DNA of 64,000 nucleotides from assembly GCA_937625935.1 (NCBI GenBank), contig OW569382.1:186001-250000 (forward strand), written 5' to 3'. Origin of the DNA: Tetramitus jugosus. Lineage: Eukaryota; Protista; Heterolobosea. A model generated the notes under the pieces. That model saw only the letters and a list, made by a program, of their open reading frames with translations. It ran no database searches and was not told where the DNA came from. The position numbers and the translations under genes are program-made. Positions within the stretch are counted from its first letter, which is position 1. Each line of letters starts with the position of its first letter. This document shows positions 6,006 to 15,128 of the stretch, in pieces.

Positions 6006-6283
6006 CTTCTTTTTGTTACTCCCGACTGTTTATTTTTTGCTTGGATTTAGGTTTTTTTCATCCGGTTCTTCCGCGCAGAAATTCAATTCGGAATAAACTC
6101 ATAAAATCGCGATCTGAAATTCGTAGATGTAAAAAAGGGCGCGAATTGCATTTTCCGTCATCTCGGAGCGCTTGAACATCTCTTCCAACCAACGTGCCCA
6201 ATCATTTTCCTGAACGTGTCTGTGAAAAACCCAACCCACCACAAACAAAACAGCCAACCAAAACAAACAAACAACACTCAAAA

Positions 6284-7714
6284 ATGTTCAAGCAAACCAT
6301 TCAACGCTTTGCCAACAACAACAACAACAGCGTCAATAGCAGACAACTTGTCTATCGCTTCTACTCTACTCAACAACAGTCAACAACTCCTCCACTGTTG
6401 TCTCTTGCTCCAGTAGACTTTGTCGATGCCATGAAAAAGAATGGTGTGAGAAGAGCATACATTGTTCATGACTCCAAGACCAACACCACAAAGACTAGTC
6501 ATCCCATGTTTGATCAAATGGCGCAACAAATTGTGAGTGACAAGAGAGACTTTTTGGGTCATGAAGCCGTCTTTTTTGAGATTGGTAAACAGTCTGATGC
6601 ACTGTTGGCTGCATTCATTCAAAAGACCATTAGAGGCACTCCACAGGGAGGTGTTCGACTGTGGCACTACAACACCATGGAGAGTGTGGTGAGAGATGGA
6701 TTGAGATTGTCTGCTGGTATGGGCAGAAAGAATGCATTGGCTGGATTGTATTGGGGAGGTGGCAAAGGTATCATTGTCAAGAACACGACTGCTTCTTCAG
6801 TCAATTTTGATGATGCAAAGACGAGAGATGTCGTCTTTGGTGACTATGGTGATTTCTTGACTGGATTGAGAGGTGCTTACTATGGCGCAGAAGATGTTGG
6901 ATTGACACCAGAGGACACTGCACGTATGTTTGCAAGAACAAGATTCATGACTTGTATTCCACAAGAGTTGGGCGGTTCTGGAAATCCTTCCAAGAGCACT
7001 GGCATGGGTGTCGTGTGTGGTATGGAAGCTGGATTGGACTTTTTGAAGATGGGTGACATCAAGGGAAAGAAGGTTGTGATCCAAGGTGCAGGCAATGTCG
7101 CAGGATTCGTTCTCGATGACCTGTTGAGCAAGCAAGTGGGCAAAGTCATCATGAGTGACATTAATGCAAAGCTCATTGAACAGAGAAGAGTCCAGTACAA
7201 GGACTATGCTCACATTGTTGAGTTTAGATTGACCACACCAGATGACAATAGCATCTTGTTTGAGCCGTGCGACGTGTTGGCTCCTTGTGCTCTGGGAGGT
7301 ATCATCAACTCTGAGACCATTCCAAAATTGAACTGCAAGGTCGTTGCTGGTGCTGCCAACAATCAATTGTTGGACCCTGTGGAGCACGATTATGCACTCA
7401 AGGAGAGAAACATTGTCTACGTTCCTGACTACTTGTTGAACAGAATGGGTATTGTCAACTGTGCCAATGAGAATTATGGTTATGTGAAAAATGATCCAAT
7501 GATTGCTCGTCACTTTGGTAGAGAATGGGAGAATGCCATCTTCAATATTGCCATCTCTGTTTTGACCAACTCTCAAAAGGACGGTATTCCAACCGGTATG
7601 GCCGCAAACAAGTTGGCTGATGAATTGGCAGAGAAGGAGCATCCAATCATGGGACACAGAGCATGGAACATTATTCAAGGTTTGATTGCTGACAAGTGGG
7701 CAGAAGGCAAATAA
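6284..7714 (+). CDS. Glu/Leu/Phe/Val dehydrogenase family protein with probable mitochondrial presequence
   Basis: GGVR, GGGKG, AEDVG, GSGNPS, IQGAGNVA, APCALGG and AGAANNQL motifs; N-terminus MFKQTIQRF lacks acidic residues. Confidence 0.9.
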   Translation: MFKQTIQRFANNNNNSVNSRQLVYRFYSTQQQSTTPPLLSLAPVDFVDAMKKNGVRRAYIVHDSKTNTTKTSHPMFDQMAQQIVSDKRDFLGHEAVFFEIGKQSDALLAAFIQKTIRGTPQGGVRLWHYNTMESVVRDGLRLSAGMGRKNALAGLYWGGGKGIIVKNTTASSVNFDDAKTRDVVFGDYGDFLTGLRGAYYGAEDVGLTPEDTARMFARTRFMTCIPQELGGSGNPSKSTGMGVVCGMEAGLDFLKMGDIKGKKVVIQGAGNVAGFVLDDLLSKQVGKVIMSDINAKLIEQRRVQYKDYAHIVEFRLTTPDDNSILFEPCDVLAPCALGGIINSETIPKLNCKVVAGAANNQLLDPVEHDYALKERNIVYVPDYLLNRMGIVNCANENYGYVKNDPMIARHFGREWENAIFNIAISVLTNSQKDGIPTGMAANKLADELAEKEHPIMGHRAWNIIQGLIADKWAEGK

Positions 7715-7941: not shown

Positions 7942-9798
7942 ATGGGAGCATATCAAGCTAAAATCCAGTGTGAAGATGTTGAGCAGAAAACAAATCACAA
8001 TAGAGGAGGAGAGAAACACAATGGGAATCACAAAATCATTATTGAAAGCGGAAATAATTACTATGACACAAAGGAGAACTGTGAGAGTGTAGAGGAAATG
8101 AGCAATGGTAGCTATGACGAGTCTGTTGGCTCCATTTCGAGCCGGTGTCCAGTGATTGGAGGAACTTCGACGAGTGAAGAATTGTTGAAATTTAGTTTAT
8201 CTTTGGACAAAATGTCAAAGAGGCTAGGAACTCCGGTTACTTCGAGATCTAGTACAGCCAAGGAGGTTCAGTGTCCTTTTGCAAAGAATTTTAAGACGAT
8301 TGTTGATGATCACAAGGGAAGCCTCTCTTCTGCTCTTATTTCAATGTCTCCTGTACCCATCATTGGCTACAGCAGCTCGGGTACGATACAAGTCTATAAT
8401 CGTGCAGCAGAGAGGGTGTTTGAATATCTAGAATCTGATGTTGTCGGCTACGATTTATCAACTCTGATACTGGAGGAGGACGCACACTCTATGATCTCAG
8501 TATCCAAGAGCCATCAAGCTAAAAACTCGGCAATTTTCAATCAAAAAGTGGTTATTGGAAGACGGTGTCGTGGAGAATTGTTTCCTATCGAAGTGTCATT
8601 TTGTCAAGTAGTTGATTCTGAAAAGGCACAAAGTAATTCTTTCTTTATAGCGTATCTCAAAGACTTAACTGTAGACGTTCAACTGTTAGCCCTTCACAAA
8701 TTGAACAAGAAGGTGGTAAATCTGTCCACTATTCCAGTCGTTGGTATGGACAGTACATGTATTGTTCGAATATTTAATGAGGCTGCTGCAAGTGTTTTTC
8801 GTTGTTCACGAGAGGAGGTGTTAGGACAAAACATCAAGATGCTAATGCCAGAGAGATTAGCAAAGTATCACGATAAGTATGTGAATGATTACCTAACAAC
8901 AGGAAAGAAGAGAGTGTTGGATTCGGTCAGAGTAGAAGAGGGAATGAGGAAGGGTGGAGAGCTGTTTCCAATAGAGTTAAAAGCAACAGAAATTGTAGTA
9001 GCAGACAACAAGAGATGGTTTATTGGATTTGTAAGAGATCTGAGTGAAGTGATCACAAAGTCGGAGCAGAATGCCCTTACAAGATTGACCAATCAATTAT
9101 TTCCACCTACAATTGCTGCCAAGATTGCCCAGGGTGAGACATCTATTCACAACTACCACAAGGAGGTTTCCATTGCCTTTTTGGACATCGTAGGATTTAC
9201 AACAACATCGAGTATATTGTCAGCACAAGAGATTGTAACTCTTTTGGATCAGATATTCAGAGGAATCGATAATTTATTGCCAAAGTACACCTTGCTCAAG
9301 ATTAAGAGTATTGGTGATGCGTACATGATTGGATGTGGATTCCCAAATGAACATCCAGACCATGCGAAGAATATTGTGGAAGGTGCTTTCGAGATACTGG
9401 ACATTGTCAAGGAAATCAATGATTCGAACCCTACTCTCCCCTCACAACTACAAGTCAGAGTTGGTATCAATTCTGGGGATGTTATCGCTGGAATTGTCGG
9501 TACCACCAAACCTCAGTACGATTGCTGGGGTGATACTGTGAATCTAAGTTCGAGAATGGAGTCTTCAGGTGTTCCTTCTGAGATTCAAATCACGGAGGAA
9601 ACCTTTTCTCTGCTACCGGCTTATCTCCAGAAACGATTTGTGGTGAGAATTGCAGTACCAATTAAGGGCAAGGGTCTGATCGATACTTACATAACGAACA
9701 TTCATGGTAAGAAAAGAAGTTCGAGGCCTTACCTTAAGGCAAGACCATCACTCATTGATGAAGATGCCTATTCATTGAGCAGTTCGTTCCAGACATAA
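7942..9798 (+). CDS. PAS-PAS class III adenylate cyclase
   Basis: Two PAS domains (YNRAAERVF, FNEAAASVF..GELFPIE); cyclase motifs FLDIVGFT, KIKSIGDAYM and YDCWGDTVNLSSRMES with ATP-specifying Lys/Asp. Confidence 0.92.
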   Translation: MGAYQAKIQCEDVEQKTNHNRGGEKHNGNHKIIIESGNNYYDTKENCESVEEMSNGSYDESVGSISSRCPVIGGTSTSEELLKFSLSLDKMSKRLGTPVTSRSSTAKEVQCPFAKNFKTIVDDHKGSLSSALISMSPVPIIGYSSSGTIQVYNRAAERVFEYLESDVVGYDLSTLILEEDAHSMISVSKSHQAKNSAIFNQKVVIGRRCRGELFPIEVSFCQVVDSEKAQSNSFFIAYLKDLTVDVQLLALHKLNKKVVNLSTIPVVGMDSTCIVRIFNEAAASVFRCSREEVLGQNIKMLMPERLAKYHDKYVNDYLTTGKKRVLDSVRVEEGMRKGGELFPIELKATEIVVADNKRWFIGFVRDLSEVITKSEQNALTRLTNQLFPPTIAAKIAQGETSIHNYHKEVSIAFLDIVGFTTTSSILSAQEIVTLLDQIFRGIDNLLPKYTLLKIKSIGDAYMIGCGFPNEHPDHAKNIVEGAFEILDIVKEINDSNPTLPSQLQVRVGINSGDVIAGIVGTTKPQYDCWGDTVNLSSRMESSGVPSEIQITEETFSLLPAYLQKRFVVRIAVPIKGKGLIDTYITNIHGKKRSSRPYLKARPSLIDEDAYSLSSSFQT

Positions 9799-10197: not shown

Positions 10198-11304
10198 TTA
10201 TTCCCATGTACAATAGACATCGTCACCATTGTTCACCGTGTTCATCACATGCAAGTCGTGAAACTTGACACGCAATTCACCCATCACCTTTTGAGCCAAT
10301 GCAGCTGTAATGTGAGACTCATTGTTGGACATGATGGTCGCAGTGGCAGCATTATCAGCAACAGAATCAGTAGAGTTGAATAGAGCTGTAGAGGACATTG
10401 AGGATTCAAAGTACATGAACACAAATCTTCTACCTGCAAAAATAGAGTCCAACACTGGTAATTTGTTGGCTCCCAATTTGCTGTACCATCCAACAAGTCT
10501 CGTCTCACACTCCAACGTCACATGTCTGTTGATTGTGAGATGAGGAATCAAGAATTGTTTCATGAATCGACTGCCTGTTCCATTGCCTCTGCACTGTTCA
10601 CTGACACTAATGTAGTCCAAGTGACAGAATGATTCATTGTCATTCAACATGCTTACAATGGCAAATGCAGCCACCATGTGTTCTTGTGGTTGATTGGCAG
10701 TAGTAGTAGTAGTATTGGTGGTGGAATTGGTGGTAGTGGTAGTTGGACTTGTCAACAGGGCAAAACACTTGTAATTGCTGTGAATGACAAAATTGGATAA
10801 AATGTCAGCAACTGATGACTCATCTTGTCCATTGCTCAAGAATGCATCCTTGTACATTTGAATAATTTGATTCATGTATGGATCATGAATCACACATTCA
10901 AAGTATTCTTCATTCTCTTCTTCATCATCCTCATCTTGAGTCATGTCCATCATTACATCATGATCAACAACAGCAGTAGCAGCAGTAGTCATTGACTGAT
11001 GATGCTTCATCAACATGGAATAATAGTACTGAGAATTCATTTCAACAAACACTTCTTGTTCACCTGGAGGAGTAATGACAGTAAAGGGAGCAGCACTAGC
11101 ACTAACAGTAGTAGTAGTAGTAGTAGTGGATGCTGCTTCCTCCTTTGTGGTAATAGTGGTTGCAGTGGGCACAGAGGATTCAGCACTTGGTGATGATTGA
11201 TGAGAGGTAACAAATGGATGATCCATGACCATTGAAACCATCATCTCAATCGGAAGAGATGCCTGCTGTGTTTCCTGTTCTTGTTCATTTGGTTGATGAA
11301 TGCT
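10198..11304 (-). CDS. GNAT-family acetyltransferase (ORF2; +1 frame relative to ORF1, first own ATG at 11244)
   Basis: HLDYISVSEQCRGNGTGSRFM (motif A, R-x-x-G-x-G) and LVGWYSKLG (motif B); the frame stays open upstream to ~11350. Confidence 0.8.
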   Translation of the reverse strand, partial: SIHQPNEQEQETQQASLPIEMMVSMVMDHPFVTSHQSSPSAESSVPTATTITTKEEAASTTTTTTTVSASAAPFTVITPPGEQEVFVEMNSQYYYSMLMKHHQSMTTAATAVVDHDVMMDMTQDEDDEEENEEYFECVIHDPYMNQIIQMYKDAFLSNGQDESSVADILSNFVIHSNYKCFALLTSPTTTTTNSTTNTTTTTANQPQEHMVAAFAIVSMLNDNESFCHLDYISVSEQCRGNGTGSRFMKQFLIPHLTINRHVTLECETRLVGWYSKLGANKLPVLDSIFAGRRFVFMYFESSMSSTALFNSTDSVADNAATATIMSNNESHITAALAQKVMGELRVKFHDLHVMNTVNNGDDVYCTWE

Positions 11305-11515
11305 AAAACCATTGCTTTGCGAGCATATGACGGTGGAATCTATCGTGCATCATCAAATCATGGTCATTGTTCATCATTTCCATTTGTTCTTGCTCCTTTG
11401 TATTCTTGTTCACAACAGACATGTGGTTGTGATTCACATCTAGGTTGTTGATGTGATTGTTACTATTATTATTATGATTATGATTATTATTACTCGTAGA
11501 GATTAATTGCAACAT
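11303..11515 (-). CDS. 70-codon upstream ORF1 of the GNAT gene ending TGG TTT TAG (candidate +1 frameshift site)
   Basis: ATG follows an AC-rich leader like other genes here; N/Q/E/M-rich composition matches the start of ORF2; overlaps ORF2 in the +1 frame. Confidence 0.65.
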   Translation of the reverse strand: MLQLISTSNNNHNHNNNSNNHINNLDVNHNHMSVVNKNTKEQEQMEMMNNDHDLMMHDRFHRHMLAKQWF

Positions 11516-11900
11516 GATACACGATTGATATTGGGACGAGTGTGCTGCTGAATGTGCTGTTTTTTTTGAAGGTTGAGTTTTTTTTGGGTATTGAAAGAAT
11601 TTGGTGGTGGTTTTCTGCTGGTAAGAGAGAAAGTTGCTGTTGATTTGTTTGACTTTTGTTGTGGGTGATGTAGACCGACGAGAAGTGCAGAGTAGAGTAG
11701 TATACGGGTGGAGCTATGTACTAAATTTTTGAAACGTGTTCTTTGTGTGTGTTATTTTTTTTCGTCGTTGCCCCCTTCTGAAGAGGACAAAAATGACATT
11801 GAGGGGTGGCGAAGGAACAACATCCTGAGTGATTACAACAACTCTGAATCAGTTGAAACGCCACCTGCGAAAAATATCACGGAGGAAATATCTTGCAAAA

Positions 11901-11971
11901 TGCATTGACCGGGAATCGAACCCGGGTCCTCAGCTTGGAAGGCTGAGATGCTGCCTCTACACCATCAATGC
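11901..11971 (-). tRNA. tRNA-Gly (anticodon TCC)
   Basis: GCATTGA/TCAATGC acceptor stem, CTCAGC-CTTCCAA-GCTGAG anticodon arm, GGTTCGATTCC T-arm, followed by a TTTT Pol III terminator. Confidence 0.97.
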
Positions 11972-12036: not shown

Positions 12037-13230
12037 ATGAAAAAACGAACACACACCCCTGTTGTTCATGAGTATGAGAATCCACGCTATGCTGTGTGGA
12101 CCACAGCACCAAGAGGAACTGCGCCAAGCAGCAAGGAGGTCATCATCACTGGAAAGTGTGATGACTCTCCCAAGGCTGCCTTGGCCAAGAAGATTGGCTT
12201 GGATTTTGGTGATTTGCTCACCAGGGTCCAAGTCATCAAGAAGGGCCCCAAGAGGTTTGTTGCGTGGGTAACTGTTGTTGATGACAACATTTACCCATTT
12301 GTTGAATCCTTCAACCGCAACAAGAAGATGAGTGGCTGCAAGGCAGCACTCAAGCACAACGTAGATTGTGCCAAGAAGGTCGTCCTCCACGGTGTCAAAG
12401 GTAAGACGGAGGACGACATCAAGACCATGCTTGGCACAACAAAGGTCAAGAACGTGCTCAAGAAGCACGACACCGCCTTTGTTGTGATGGAGTCCGAAAC
12501 GTATGCCGAAGCTTTGCTTCGGAACGTTCAATCCATGCCAGTGGAGGTGGAAGCAAAGCGCTTCCTTCCACGCCCACGTGATCCTGTCAAGGCTGTCAGC
12601 AAGAGGCTGACCAAGATGTACCAAGAGCTACTGGCTGTGGTGGACGACCTGCGCCACCAAGTCAGTGTGTTAAAAGATATGGCTTCCGTCAACCGGATTC
12701 CCCTCGCATCCCCGTCTCCAAGGACGCCGGAGCGAATCTCCGAATTCGAACCTTCGACTCCGTCTACGACCGATGACTGGGAGTCGATCATGCCGGAGTC
12801 CCATCCCGCCACTCCAACTACGGTCATCACAGAGCCAACCAACAACACCATTGATGAGGATGCTCGTAACAGAGCAATCCTCGAGCTAGTATTGAACACC
12901 TCCGAGGTGTTCAAGAAAGTCAAGAAAGAGATTGCTGCCCGAGCAATCATGGTGGACCGTGCAAGAAGCACAACCACCGAAGAAGATCCAGTTGAGTTGG
13001 ATCTCAGTACCCCGACTGTGAGTTACAGAGTCCCCAACTCAACGAACACAAGAAGCGATCAGCACGTGTCACCGTTGGTGACACTGCTGCCAACAAGATC
13101 CCGGCCAGGTTGGCCAGTATCAAGTCAGGTGCTCTCCGTAGGTCCTACCAATTGGCTAGGACTACGGAGCCATCTGACCTCACCAGTGGTGCTCCAGATG
13201 GCAGTGGAGGCCCTCGCAACGAATCCCTGA
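12037..13230 (+). CDS. Retroelement ORF1-like protein, copy 1 (probable RRM-like folds plus coiled coil)
   Basis: Clear paralog of 13447-14172 (RYAVWTT, RFVAWVTV, KVVxHGxKG, DTAFVVM, KRLTKMYxELL); lies inside a poly(A)-tailed unit. Confidence 0.7.
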   Translation: MKKRTHTPVVHEYENPRYAVWTTAPRGTAPSSKEVIITGKCDDSPKAALAKKIGLDFGDLLTRVQVIKKGPKRFVAWVTVVDDNIYPFVESFNRNKKMSGCKAALKHNVDCAKKVVLHGVKGKTEDDIKTMLGTTKVKNVLKKHDTAFVVMESETYAEALLRNVQSMPVEVEAKRFLPRPRDPVKAVSKRLTKMYQELLAVVDDLRHQVSVLKDMASVNRIPLASPSPRTPERISEFEPSTPSTTDDWESIMPESHPATPTTVITEPTNNTIDEDARNRAILELVLNTSEVFKKVKKEIAARAIMVDRARSTTTEEDPVELDLSTPTVSYRVPNSTNTRSDQHVSPLVTLLPTRSRPGWPVSSQVLSVGPTNWLGLRSHLTSPVVLQMAVEALATNP

Positions 13231-13446: not shown

Positions 13447-14172
13447 ATGTCTGGTGATTCAACAAATTTGGTGAAGGAATACGGCAACAGCCGTTATGCA
13501 GTGTGGACCACTACACGGAGAGGCTCTAGGCCAAGTGACAGAGAGGTGGTCATTACTGGCAACGGTAATGGTGTCTCTCAGTCATCTTTGGCAAGAAAGA
13601 TAGGAGAGGAGTTTGGTGACTGGCTCAACCGAGTCCAGGTCATCAAGAGGAAAGGCCAGCAACGCTTTGTTGCATGGGTGACGGTCAAGGGTGACCGCAT
13701 CTATGACTTTGTTGAGTTGTTCAACAAAGAGAGGAGGATTGGCAACAGCACTGCTGCACCCAAGCGCAGTGTTGATTGCACAAGAAAGGTGGTCGTCCAT
13801 GGCATGAAGGGCATGTCAGTGGACGACATCAAGAAGCTACTGGGACCTGAGAAGGTTGCCAGTGTGCTCAAGAAGCGTGACACTGCTTTCGTGGTCATGG
13901 GTGATGAAACCTATGCACGGGCAGTGCTCAGCGGAGAGAACAAGGTAAAGGTCACGGTCATTCGATACGTCGAGAGACCACATGATCCTCTCAAGGCTGT
14001 CAACAAGAGGTTGACCAAGATGTACGAGGAGCTGCTGACGGTGGTTGACGCACTGCGTCTACAGGTCACAGAACTCACCAAGGAATTGACAAAGACAAAG
14101 GGTCAAGAGAGCAACAACAAGAGAAGAAGAGTGAACGCCCTACGGGTCGTCACTCACAAAACAAGTCAATAA
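13447..14172 (+). CDS. Retroelement ORF1-like protein, copy 2
   Basis: Intact ORF paralogous to 12037-13230, followed by a hairpin, poly(A) and the target duplication. Confidence 0.7.
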   Translation: MSGDSTNLVKEYGNSRYAVWTTTRRGSRPSDREVVITGNGNGVSQSSLARKIGEEFGDWLNRVQVIKRKGQQRFVAWVTVKGDRIYDFVELFNKERRIGNSTAAPKRSVDCTRKVVVHGMKGMSVDDIKKLLGPEKVASVLKKRDTAFVVMGDETYARAVLSGENKVKVTVIRYVERPHDPLKAVNKRLTKMYEELLTVVDALRLQVTELTKELTKTKGQESNNKRRRVNALRVVTHKTSQ

Positions 14173-14310: not shown

Positions 14311-15128
14311 GGACTGCTGGGGGACTTCTCAGGGTGAACAGACTGGGAAGGATGCCGGTCAAACATGGCTCAAGAGCGATGTCACAGTTTCCTTCCGAGT
14401 TACTGTCGGTCAGCAGTGATCGTGGATCAGTGGGTCTCAATGACATAGAGGAACAAACCGCCTGGTTTATTGGCTAAATGGTGTCTGGTCAGAGGGACAC
14501 GGAAGTGAAGCAGTTGCTGCTTGACACGCTTGAGGAAATGGTGACTCGGCAGTATTAAAGAGATTTGCGGTCTGTGGTGGTTACAAGTTGAAGCAATGTG
14601 TGGTGGGGTGGACTTTAGCTTTCTAAAGTACCCCCACAAGATTGACAGAAAGCTGGAATGGTTCTATGCACAAGTGCGGAGTGGTACTTTGCACACTCGA
14701 GAAGTCATGAGGGTATTGTATGGAAAAAATGAAGCTCCAACAGTGTGCGAAAGATGTAACAAGGAGTCAGAGACTATTCTACATTGTCTCATTCGCTGTC
14801 CAAGAGCAATATTGACTAGAAGAAGACTGGCTATGTCTGTAGGTGATGAACTGAGTACTCTGGGAGGCCACCCAAAACACCAGATAGACCTATGGTTCGA
14901 CTCTGTGTGTTGGGAAGGCGGTAAGCTGACAGTGCAACCAAACCGAAAATCGAGCAAAGAGTTCCTCCTAGGTATGATGGGTGTAGAGAAGCAGTGGATC
15001 AAATTATGAGAGGGATGAGGAAGAACGGTATCAAGAAAGATTTTGCGGAAAAGAGAGCCAGAACATTTGTGAACAAGGTGAAAAGGAGGTGCGTCGAAAC
15101 CCTTCACCAATTGTACACCTCCTATAAG
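14311..15128 (+). pseudogene. 5'-truncated, degenerate C-terminus of a LINE ORF2 (zf-RVT zinc-binding domain)
   Basis: KLEWFYAQVRSGTLHT...CERCNKESETILHCLIRCP is the CCHC zf-RVT motif of L1-group reverse transcriptases; in-frame stops on both sides. Confidence 0.8.

What the first reader, a model, noticed from the sequence alone, without database searches (positions are those of the whole stretch)
10198..11515. GNAT acetyltransferase with antizyme-like +1 ribosomal frameshift architecture (UGG-UUU-UAG)
Seen: a 70-codon ORF1 ends CAA-UGG-UUU-UAG-C (UUU 11308-11306, UAG 11305-11303). The GNAT frame is +1 and open through this site, so tRNA-Phe could re-pair perfectly on the overlapping UUU and continue SIHQPNEQEQETQQ..., which has the same composition as ORF1. 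Known: ornithine decarboxylase antizymes use a short ORF1 and a polyamine-stimulated +1 shift at a P-site codon plus stop (UCC-UGA in vertebrates, UUU-UGA in some nematodes) and have an acetyltransferase-like fold without the acetyl-CoA motif. This protein keeps R-G-N-G-T-G. Inference: a catalytically competent GNAT, possibly a polyamine acetyltransferase, under frameshift control; it could be an undescribed recoding system or a link between GNATs and antizymes.
Basis: partly seen in the sequence, partly recalled or inferred. Interest (0 to 1): 0.88.

Follow-up and report, generated by a model that had tools for sequence, protein, structure and literature searches.

The report
Frameshift-controlled acetyltransferase in amoebae
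This amoeba gene for an acetyl-transferring enzyme appears to be made in full only when ribosomes slip one base at a built-in stop codon, and the slip site is kept in very distant relatives, a control trick known in eukaryotes mainly from the polyamine regulator antizyme and not found described for such an enzyme.

Summary
Confirmed and much strengthened. ORF1 (70 codons, first AUG of an AUG-free leader) ends UGG-UUU-UAG-C; a complete GNAT fold with intact acetyl-CoA motif follows in the +1 frame. Contigs from four studies, one oligo-dT RNA, cross the junction with no indel or splice. Homologues were chosen by protein similarity alone. Of 14 distinct eukaryotic family genes with DNA, 11 (down to 22% identity, including a paralogue in this genome) have invariant UUU-UAG-C. 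Two dictyostelid genes have UCC-UGA-U, the vertebrate antizyme site; one gene has no site. ORF1 ends are conserved as peptide, and in five loci the first in-frame AUG lies inside the fold. Best reading: programmed +1 shifty-stop frameshifting aided by a nascent peptide (0.88). Polyamine sensing and polyamine acetylation are inferred only (about 0.45). It is not an antizyme: no ODC_AZ match, and no antizyme among the top 50 fold matches. No prior description found in the papers searched. The scan noted the same architecture on another piece of this genome (s1-547839, probably the paralogue). The genome is probably Tetramitus jugosus.

The parts
11516..11740 (-). AUG-free 5' leader; ORF1 AUG is the first AUG
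   Evidence: 0 ATG; RNA-library contig X9 reaches 11725, oligo-dT contig X16 reaches 11548; transcript start not mapped
11303..11515 (-). ORF1, 70 codons plus UAG; low-complexity N-terminal part, conserved C-terminal end
   Evidence: 38-77 codons in clade relatives; strain indels in ORF1 are in frame
11306..11335 (-). Conserved ORF1 C-terminal peptide HRHMLAKQWF, candidate nascent-peptide stimulator
   Evidence: identical or nearly so in L003, L004, L005, L007; synonymous changes exceed non-synonymous only in the ORF1 frame (12:6 versus 8:18 and 1:23)
11302..11308 (-). +1 shift site UUU-UAG-C (P-site tRNA-Phe can re-pair on the overlapping UUU; UAG is the rarest stop here)
   Evidence: invariant in 11 of 11 distinct genes; TAG ends 7 of 53 long ORFs and none as TAGC
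11296..11302 (-). 3' context after the stop; family consensus CG-U-C/U-C, resembling the antizyme UCCCU element; the window allele reads CA where other strains read CG
   Evidence: antizyme element from PMC1874602
10198..11304 (-). ORF2 in the +1 frame, 368 codons after the shift: unconserved low-complexity linker, then GNAT domain
11242..11244 (-). First in-frame AUG of ORF2; not conserved in the family; 13 ATGs lie 5' of it from the ORF1 start
10408..10905 (-). GNAT core (beta1 to beta6/7) with a Thr/Asn-rich insertion
   Evidence: AlphaFold model pLDDT 84; VIA Z 18.0 to 3ey5_A, rmsd 2.5 over 162 residues
10573..10590 (-). Motif A R-G-N-G-T-G, acetyl-CoA pyrophosphate loop
   Evidence: three glycines invariant and Arg at least 90% in 15 family members
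10204..10305 (-). Family-specific C-terminal helix plus two strands (E-x-R-x-x-x-H ... W)

Best explanation
A programmed +1 ribosomal frameshift of the shifty-stop type expresses a GNAT acetyltransferase. Ribosomes start at the ORF1 AUG and reach UUU-UAG-C. Termination is slow there (rarest stop, C after it, probably a pause from the conserved basic/aromatic nascent peptide), and some P-site tRNA-Phe slip one base onto the overlapping UUU and go on as Ser-Ile-His... into the GNAT. The rest terminate and release a 70-aa peptide, so enzyme output depends on termination efficiency at this stop. Shown: the geometry, its presence in unspliced RNA-library contigs, its conservation, peptide-level selection on ORF1, the fold. 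Inferred: that slippage occurs (0.88), that it is regulated (about 0.7), that the signal is polyamines and the enzyme acetylates them in an antizyme/SSAT-like negative feedback (about 0.45).
For: No indel or joint in 4 studies incl. oligo-dT RNA. TTT-TAG-C invariant in 11/11 distinct genes from clades at 22-71% identity, G and T after it in 10/11, conservation falling off on both sides. Two dictyostelid genes use TCC-TGA-T in the same geometry, and UCC-UGA and UUU-stop are the two sites that recur in antizymes (PMC1874602). ORF1 ends conserved as peptide in four clades (syn:non-syn 12:6, 42:23, 11:8, 7:0 in ORF1 frame; reversed in other frames). In L005, L008, L013, L025 and L026 the first in-frame AUG lies after helix alpha1, in L013 after the beta4 Asp-Tyr. 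Zero-frame readthrough hits a stop after 5 codons here and is unconserved. Lys four codons from the end in three of four clades. ODC-family genes exist in the genome. Precedent for a polyamine-responsive nascent-peptide stimulator at UUU-UGA: PMC4505036.
Against: No ribosome profiling, proteomics or reporter data. RNA evidence is from contigs, which drop rare variants and cannot show strand. This gene has an in-frame AUG (11244) upstream of the whole domain. Substrate unresolved: best sequence hits are glucosamine-6-P and serotonin N-acetyltransferases (E 4e-7, 4e-5), SSATs follow (E 2e-4 to 7e-4). One family clade (L011) has no site; three dictyostelid gene models are continuous, and a frame-restoring 85-nt GTAAG..AAG intron is possible in L024/L026. 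No conserved 3' RNA structure. The tree does not resolve whether the shifting clades share one origin.
Confidence: 0.88

Rival explanations
1. ORF1 is a regulatory uORF (stalling peptide, like AdoMetDC MAGDIS or the overlapping uORF of vertebrate SSAT) and the GNAT is made by reinitiation or leaky scanning at a downstream AUG.
For: ORF1 peptide is conserved; window has an in-frame AUG at 11244; vertebrate SSAT mRNAs have overlapping uORFs (PMC2811004).
Against: Does not explain an invariant re-pairable codon plus stop always in +1 geometry with an open frame; in five loci the first in-frame AUG would delete part of the fold, and the annotated Met of P. violaceum is Ile in its relative; 13 upstream ATGs here.
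Confidence: 0.07
2. The frameshift is real but senses termination efficiency or another ligand (eRF1 level, stress, acetyl-CoA or amino-sugar status) rather than polyamines; the enzyme has another acceptor.
Against: Both antizyme-type sites (UUU-stop, UCC-UGA) and an antizyme-like 3' context occur in the family; a GNAT whose level rises with polyamines fits known SSAT physiology.
Confidence: 0.4
3. The TAG is a 3' splice site or the frame is restored by an intron, editing or transcriptional slippage.
For: TTTTAG resembles an acceptor; 19 GT..AG pairs would restore the frame on paper; for dictyostelids a GTAAG donor lies 33 nt before the stop and other dictyostelid models diverge from ORF1 exactly there.
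Against: No joint or indel in RNA contigs; codons just 5' of the TAG are under peptide-level selection, unlike an intron end; in dictyostelids the would-be intron has 3 synonymous and 0 non-synonymous changes in ORF1 frame and 56-58% AT against 74-79% in flanking non-coding DNA. Plausible for the dictyostelid genes (about 0.25), not for the window gene.
Confidence: 0.03
4. Euplotes-like pervasive frameshifting at internal stops, so this gene is one of many and unregulated.
For: A UUU-UAGA site was proposed in Euplotes SHMT (PMC5011710).
Against: Only the two paralogues among 77 motif matches have the architecture; TAG is an ordinary stop in long ORFs; the site is conserved gene-specifically across lineages.
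Confidence: 0.02
5. The protein is a divergent ornithine decarboxylase antizyme, or a surviving enzyme ancestor of antizyme.
For: Same gene architecture and sites; antizyme has structural similarity to SSAT (PMC5009743); no PF02100 match found in this genome (no positive control).
Confidence: 0.08

Closest known systems
Ornithine decarboxylase antizyme (OAZ) +1 frameshift; PMC1874602
   Same: Short ORF1 (typically about 60 codons), +1 shift at last codon plus stop, UUU-stop or UCC-UGA sites, weak C or U termination context, pyrimidine-rich element just 3' of the stop, GNAT-related product.
   Different: Product is a full GNAT with intact motif A and no ODC_AZ match; stop is UAG in the heterolobosean clades whereas antizymes almost always use UGA; no pseudoknot or module A detected; polyamine response untested.
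Agaricomycete antizyme nascent-peptide stimulator (UUU-UGA); PMC4505036
   Same: Peptide-level conservation of the ORF1 C-terminus next to a UUU-stop site, ending aromatic/basic then Phe.
   Different: Unrelated peptide sequences, four clade-specific versions here; no conserved 3' stem-loops found.
Spermidine/spermine N1-acetyltransferase (SSAT1, PaiA, SpeG)
   Same: GNAT fold, motif A, acidic residue on beta4, catalytic Tyr position; vertebrate SSAT mRNA also has a short upstream ORF overlapping the main ORF (PMC2811004).
   Different: SSAT has its own AUG and no frameshift; similarity is no better than to other GNATs (11-17% identity in structure matches); extra C-terminal helix-strand element here.
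Bacterial release factor 2 (prfB) CUU-UGA-C autoregulatory frameshift; PMC5009743
   Same: Shifty stop early in the gene, re-pairing on UUU, C after the stop.
   Different: Bacterial, needs an internal Shine-Dalgarno, product is the release factor itself.
PDB 3ey5 (Bacteroides thetaiotaomicron putative GNAT) and related bacterial GNATs
   Same: Best structural match, Z 18.0, includes the C-terminal extension.
   Different: 12% identity, function unknown; bacterial relatives seen here (L022, L065) start at an ordinary ATG with no shift site.

Membership tests
ODC antizyme | Match to Pfam ODC_AZ (PF02100) | tested here: not met
   0 of 15 members at E up to 10
ODC antizyme | Degenerate acetyltransferase fold without acetyl-CoA motif A (from own knowledge of the antizyme structure) | tested here: not met
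   R-G-x-G-x-G conserved, alpha1-alpha2 present; antizyme not in top 50 fold matches
ODC antizyme | Short ORF1 and main ORF in +1 frame joined at last codon plus stop | tested here: met
   13 of 14 eukaryotic family genes with DNA
ODC antizyme | Polyamine-stimulated shift; binds ODC and targets it to the proteasome | not testable with these tools
   needs reporter and binding assays
GNAT superfamily | GNAT fold with beta4 and motif A R/Q-x-x-G-x-G | tested here: met
   (15 of 15 members match Acetyltransf_1)
Spermidine/spermine N-acetyltransferase | Closest sequence or structure relatives are SSAT, PaiA or SpeG | tested here: inconclusive
   PaiA first in Foldseek and E. faecalis SSAT near the top, but tied with many GNATs; GNA1 and SNAT rank higher by HMM
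Spermidine/spermine N-acetyltransferase | Acetylates polyamines | not testable with these tools
   enzyme assay needed
Programmed +1 shifty-stop frameshifting | Site present in genome and unspliced RNA, re-pairable P-site codon, phylogenetically conserved | tested here: met
Programmed +1 shifty-stop frameshifting | Trans-frame protein demonstrated | not testable with these tools
   no proteomic or ribosome-profiling data available

The most novel reading that the evidence does not exclude
A second polyamine-sensing frameshift circuit in eukaryotes: an active polyamine acetyltransferase family in Heterolobosea and Amoebozoa whose synthesis is gated by an antizyme-type +1 shift, using both classical antizyme sites and possibly sharing an origin with the antizyme recoding cassette.
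Probability: 0.4. Interest if true: 0.93.

Novelty: new variant of a known kind. Interest (0 to 1): 0.84.

Why it matters
Very few phylogenetically conserved cases of programmed frameshifting are known in nuclear genes (PMC11451614). This adds a gene family, apparently in two eukaryotic supergroups, where an intact enzyme depends on it. It supplies natural variants (UUU-UAG-C, UCC-UGA-U, four different ORF1 peptides, one allele with a changed 3' base, and a non-shifting clade) for testing how nascent peptides and polyamines slow termination. If it is polyamine-responsive it would explain why antizyme-type control suits a GNAT-fold product and bear on antizyme origins. It also shows these genes are truncated or mis-started in current annotations (for example P. 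violaceum CYY_007810, Acrasis kona AKO1_000374). Dictyostelids make it testable.

Tried and rejected
Assembly error and intron: rejected for the window gene. Stop readthrough: zero frame closes after 0-51 unconserved codons. A -2 shift: no re-pairing for tRNA-Phe at -2 (read from the sequence). Conserved 3' or 5' RNA structure: folding z-scores scatter from +1 to -3 with no common element; the shuffle was crude. Antizyme kinship: Pfam, PDB HMM and four fold searches negative. PF02100 search of the genome returned nothing but had no positive control. No family members in IMG/VR; GTDB gave only distant bacterial GNATs. A third GNAT hit (L017, C47) is an unrelated protein with no site. Sources of GCA_016850925.1, GCA_037189345.1 and SRR15710419 could not be named. 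Sigma-70 promoter scan is irrelevant for a eukaryote. The joined trans-frame protein was not searched or folded; its pieces were searched apart. Paper searches found no description of a frameshifted GNAT; the library lacks most subscription journals.

Full report
OBSERVATION. On the minus strand an ORF of 70 codons starts at ATG 11515 and ends CAA-TGG-TTT-TAG-C (TTT 11308-11306, TAG 11305-11303). The +1 frame is open from 11349 through the site to TAA at 10200-10198. A +1 slip on TTT gives 70+368 = 438 aa. The 225 nt upstream of ORF1 hold no ATG; 13 ATGs lie between the ORF1 start and the first in-frame AUG of the GNAT frame at 11244. The genome has 26.35 Mb in 56 contigs, matching Tetramitus jugosus (26.3 Mb, 55 scaffolds plus mitochondrion; PMC11106597). 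That identification is an inference from size.

ARTEFACT TESTS. Contigs from four runs of four studies cross the junction without indel and with no joint: the probable source organism (X2), a groundwater DNA run (X5), a soil metatranscriptome (X9) and an oligo-dT RNA run whose 1229-nt contig spans 10322-11548 (X16). Strain indels in ORF1 and ORF2 are multiples of three. Contigs drop rare variants, so a minor spliced form is not excluded. Other strains read TAG-CG where the window reads TAG-CA (T>C at 11301). By chance 0.19% of stop triplets in the window have TTT-TAG-C context. The 11-mer around the site occurs 77 times in the genome; of the 76 other matches only the paralogue on contig C2 has an AUG-initiated ORF ending there plus a long +1 ORF closed shortly upstream. 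TAG is the rarest stop in a sample of long ORFs (7 of 53; none followed by C).

CONSERVATION. Homologues were found by protein search only and their DNA was then read, so they were not selected for the motif. Clade A (window, L003 96%, L004 71%, L005/6 57%, L007 49%): ORF1 of 38-77 codons ending H-R/K-H-M-L-A-K-Q/L-W-F-stop. Clade B (in-genome paralogue L002, L020, L012, L008-10, L021): ORF1 of 42-58 codons ending H-R/K-Y-L-L-S-S-Q-Y/W-F-stop. Clade C (L013, L025, L014; 22-27% identity where aligned): ORF1 ending S-P-R-x-x-K-x-x-F-stop; Acrasis kona AKO1_000374 groups here and carries the +1-frame signature F-S-V, DNA not seen. Over 11 distinct genes TTT-TAG-C is invariant, the next G and T are kept in 10, and conservation falls away within about ten bases. 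One clade B gene has UCCCU from the third base after the stop, matching an element described 3 nt 3' of antizyme stops (PMC1874602); others have close variants. Polysphondylium violaceum (Amoebozoa; L024) and a relative (L026-29) have a 99-codon ORF1 ending K-H-K-S-Y-S-stop with TCC-TGA-T and the GNAT in +1: the vertebrate antizyme site. In all four clades the ORF1 end is conserved as peptide: synonymous to non-synonymous codon changes are 12:6, 42:23, 11:8 and 7:0 in the ORF1 frame and reversed in the other frames (pairwise counts, not independent events). A Lys four codons from the end is shared by clades A, C and the dictyostelids. In L005, L008, L013, L025 and L026 the first in-frame AUG lies beyond helix alpha1, so internal initiation would truncate the fold.

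EXCEPTIONS. L011 (P0006) has no site; a 72-nt GT..AG intron would remove its in-frame stop (checked for frame only, not searched joined). Gene models of D. purpureum, T. lacteum and a EukProt dictyostelid are continuous; one aligns to P. violaceum ORF1 residues 1-88 and diverges where a GTAAG lies. They may reflect predicted introns bridging the shift, real splicing, or loss. A frame-restoring 85-nt intron is possible in L024/L026, but its first 33 nt show three synonymous and no non-synonymous changes and it is far less AT-rich than flanking non-coding DNA. I put the dictyostelid frameshift at about 0.7. A maximum-likelihood tree supports A+B, C and the dictyostelid group each as clades but leaves their mutual relations open, so one origin versus several is undecided. 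Distant bacterial relatives start at ordinary ATGs; none were found in viral contigs.

PROTEIN. AlphaFold gives a complete GNAT (pLDDT 84) with an added C-terminal helix and two strands. Motif A glycines, beta4 Asp-Tyr, Leu-Glu-Cys on beta5 and the motif B Tyr are invariant or nearly so, which fits an active enzyme. The best structural match is an uncharacterised Bacteroides GNAT (3ey5_A, Z 18.0, rmsd 2.5, 162 residues). Foldseek ranks the polyamine acetyltransferase PaiA first, but within a tie of hundreds of GNATs. By HMM, glucosamine-6-phosphate and serotonin N-acetyltransferases come before SSAT1/2. No member matches ODC_AZ, and no antizyme is among the top 50 matches for the whole domain or the core alone. 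It is a GNAT of unknown acceptor and not an antizyme.

MECHANISM. Most likely: ribosomes translate ORF1, pause with UUU in the P site and a weak UAG-C stop in the A site, probably aided by the nascent peptide, and a fraction slips +1 by perfect re-pairing of tRNA-Phe. This works like antizyme and RF2 recoding (PMC1874602, PMC5009743), with a close precedent for a polyamine-responsive peptide stimulator at UUU-UGA in mushrooms (PMC4505036). Shown here: geometry, RNA presence, conservation, peptide selection, fold. Inferred: slippage (0.88), regulation, and the ligand. Polyamine feedback (more polyamine, more shift, more acetylation and export) is the most economical reading because the family uses both recurrent antizyme sites and the genome has ODC-family genes, but I give it about 0.45; sensing of termination efficiency or another metabolite is a real rival. 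No conserved RNA structure was found.

KNOWN VERSUS NEW. Seven literature searches found no frameshifted GNAT and no heterolobosean or dictyostelid antizyme-type recoding; the library is incomplete. Vertebrate SSAT has an overlapping uORF but its own AUG (PMC2811004); a UUU-UAGA shift was proposed in one Euplotes gene (PMC5011710). The mechanism class is known, its use for this enzyme family appears undescribed: a new variant of a known kind. The joined trans-frame protein was not searched or folded; pieces were searched apart.

VERDICT. Real, conserved, probably a programmed +1 frameshift in a new nuclear gene family; function of the enzyme and the regulating signal open. Interest 0.84.

Noticed in passing
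G000:C2:437325-438390 (L002:1149-2214): Paralogue with the same architecture: 45-codon ORF1 ending HRYLLSSQYF, TTT-TAG-CG, 309-codon +1 GNAT ORF.
   Followed up: yes
L024:1688-3035 (Polysphondylium violaceum CYY_007810): Annotated start Met is not conserved; upstream ORF1 ends at TCC-TGA-T in +1 geometry.
   Followed up: yes
window 11301: The window strain reads TAG-CA where other strains and nearly all homologues read TAG-CG; a natural variant of the 3' context.
   Followed up: partly
window 11901-11971 (-): tRNA-Gly(TCC) gene about 390 nt upstream of ORF1 on the same strand.
   Followed up: no
window 12037-13230 and 13447-14172 (+): Two related ORFs (397 and 241 aa) without Pfam match in a GC-richer stretch, followed by a Cys-rich zinc-finger-like ORF at 14596-15009; a similar ORF lies in L031; possibly retroelement remnants.
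   Followed up: no
window 7942-9798 (+): PAS-PAS adenylate/guanylate cyclase, convergent with the GNAT gene.
   Followed up: no
window 6194-7714 (+): Glu/Leu/Phe/Val dehydrogenase with a mitochondrial-type N-terminal extension.
   Followed up: no
G000:C4:518861-519100 (-): HepT-like (PF01934) match over cut-off in this eukaryotic genome.
   Followed up: no
G000:C7:279379, C20:373192, C8:404845: Three PLP-dependent decarboxylase (PF02784) genes; the C20 one reads like a eukaryotic ornithine decarboxylase.
   Followed up: partly
P0014, P0016, P0020-P0024, P0029, P0035, P0038: A separate AT-rich-composition clade of short GNAT relatives that start directly at the domain; origin not determined.
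   Followed up: no
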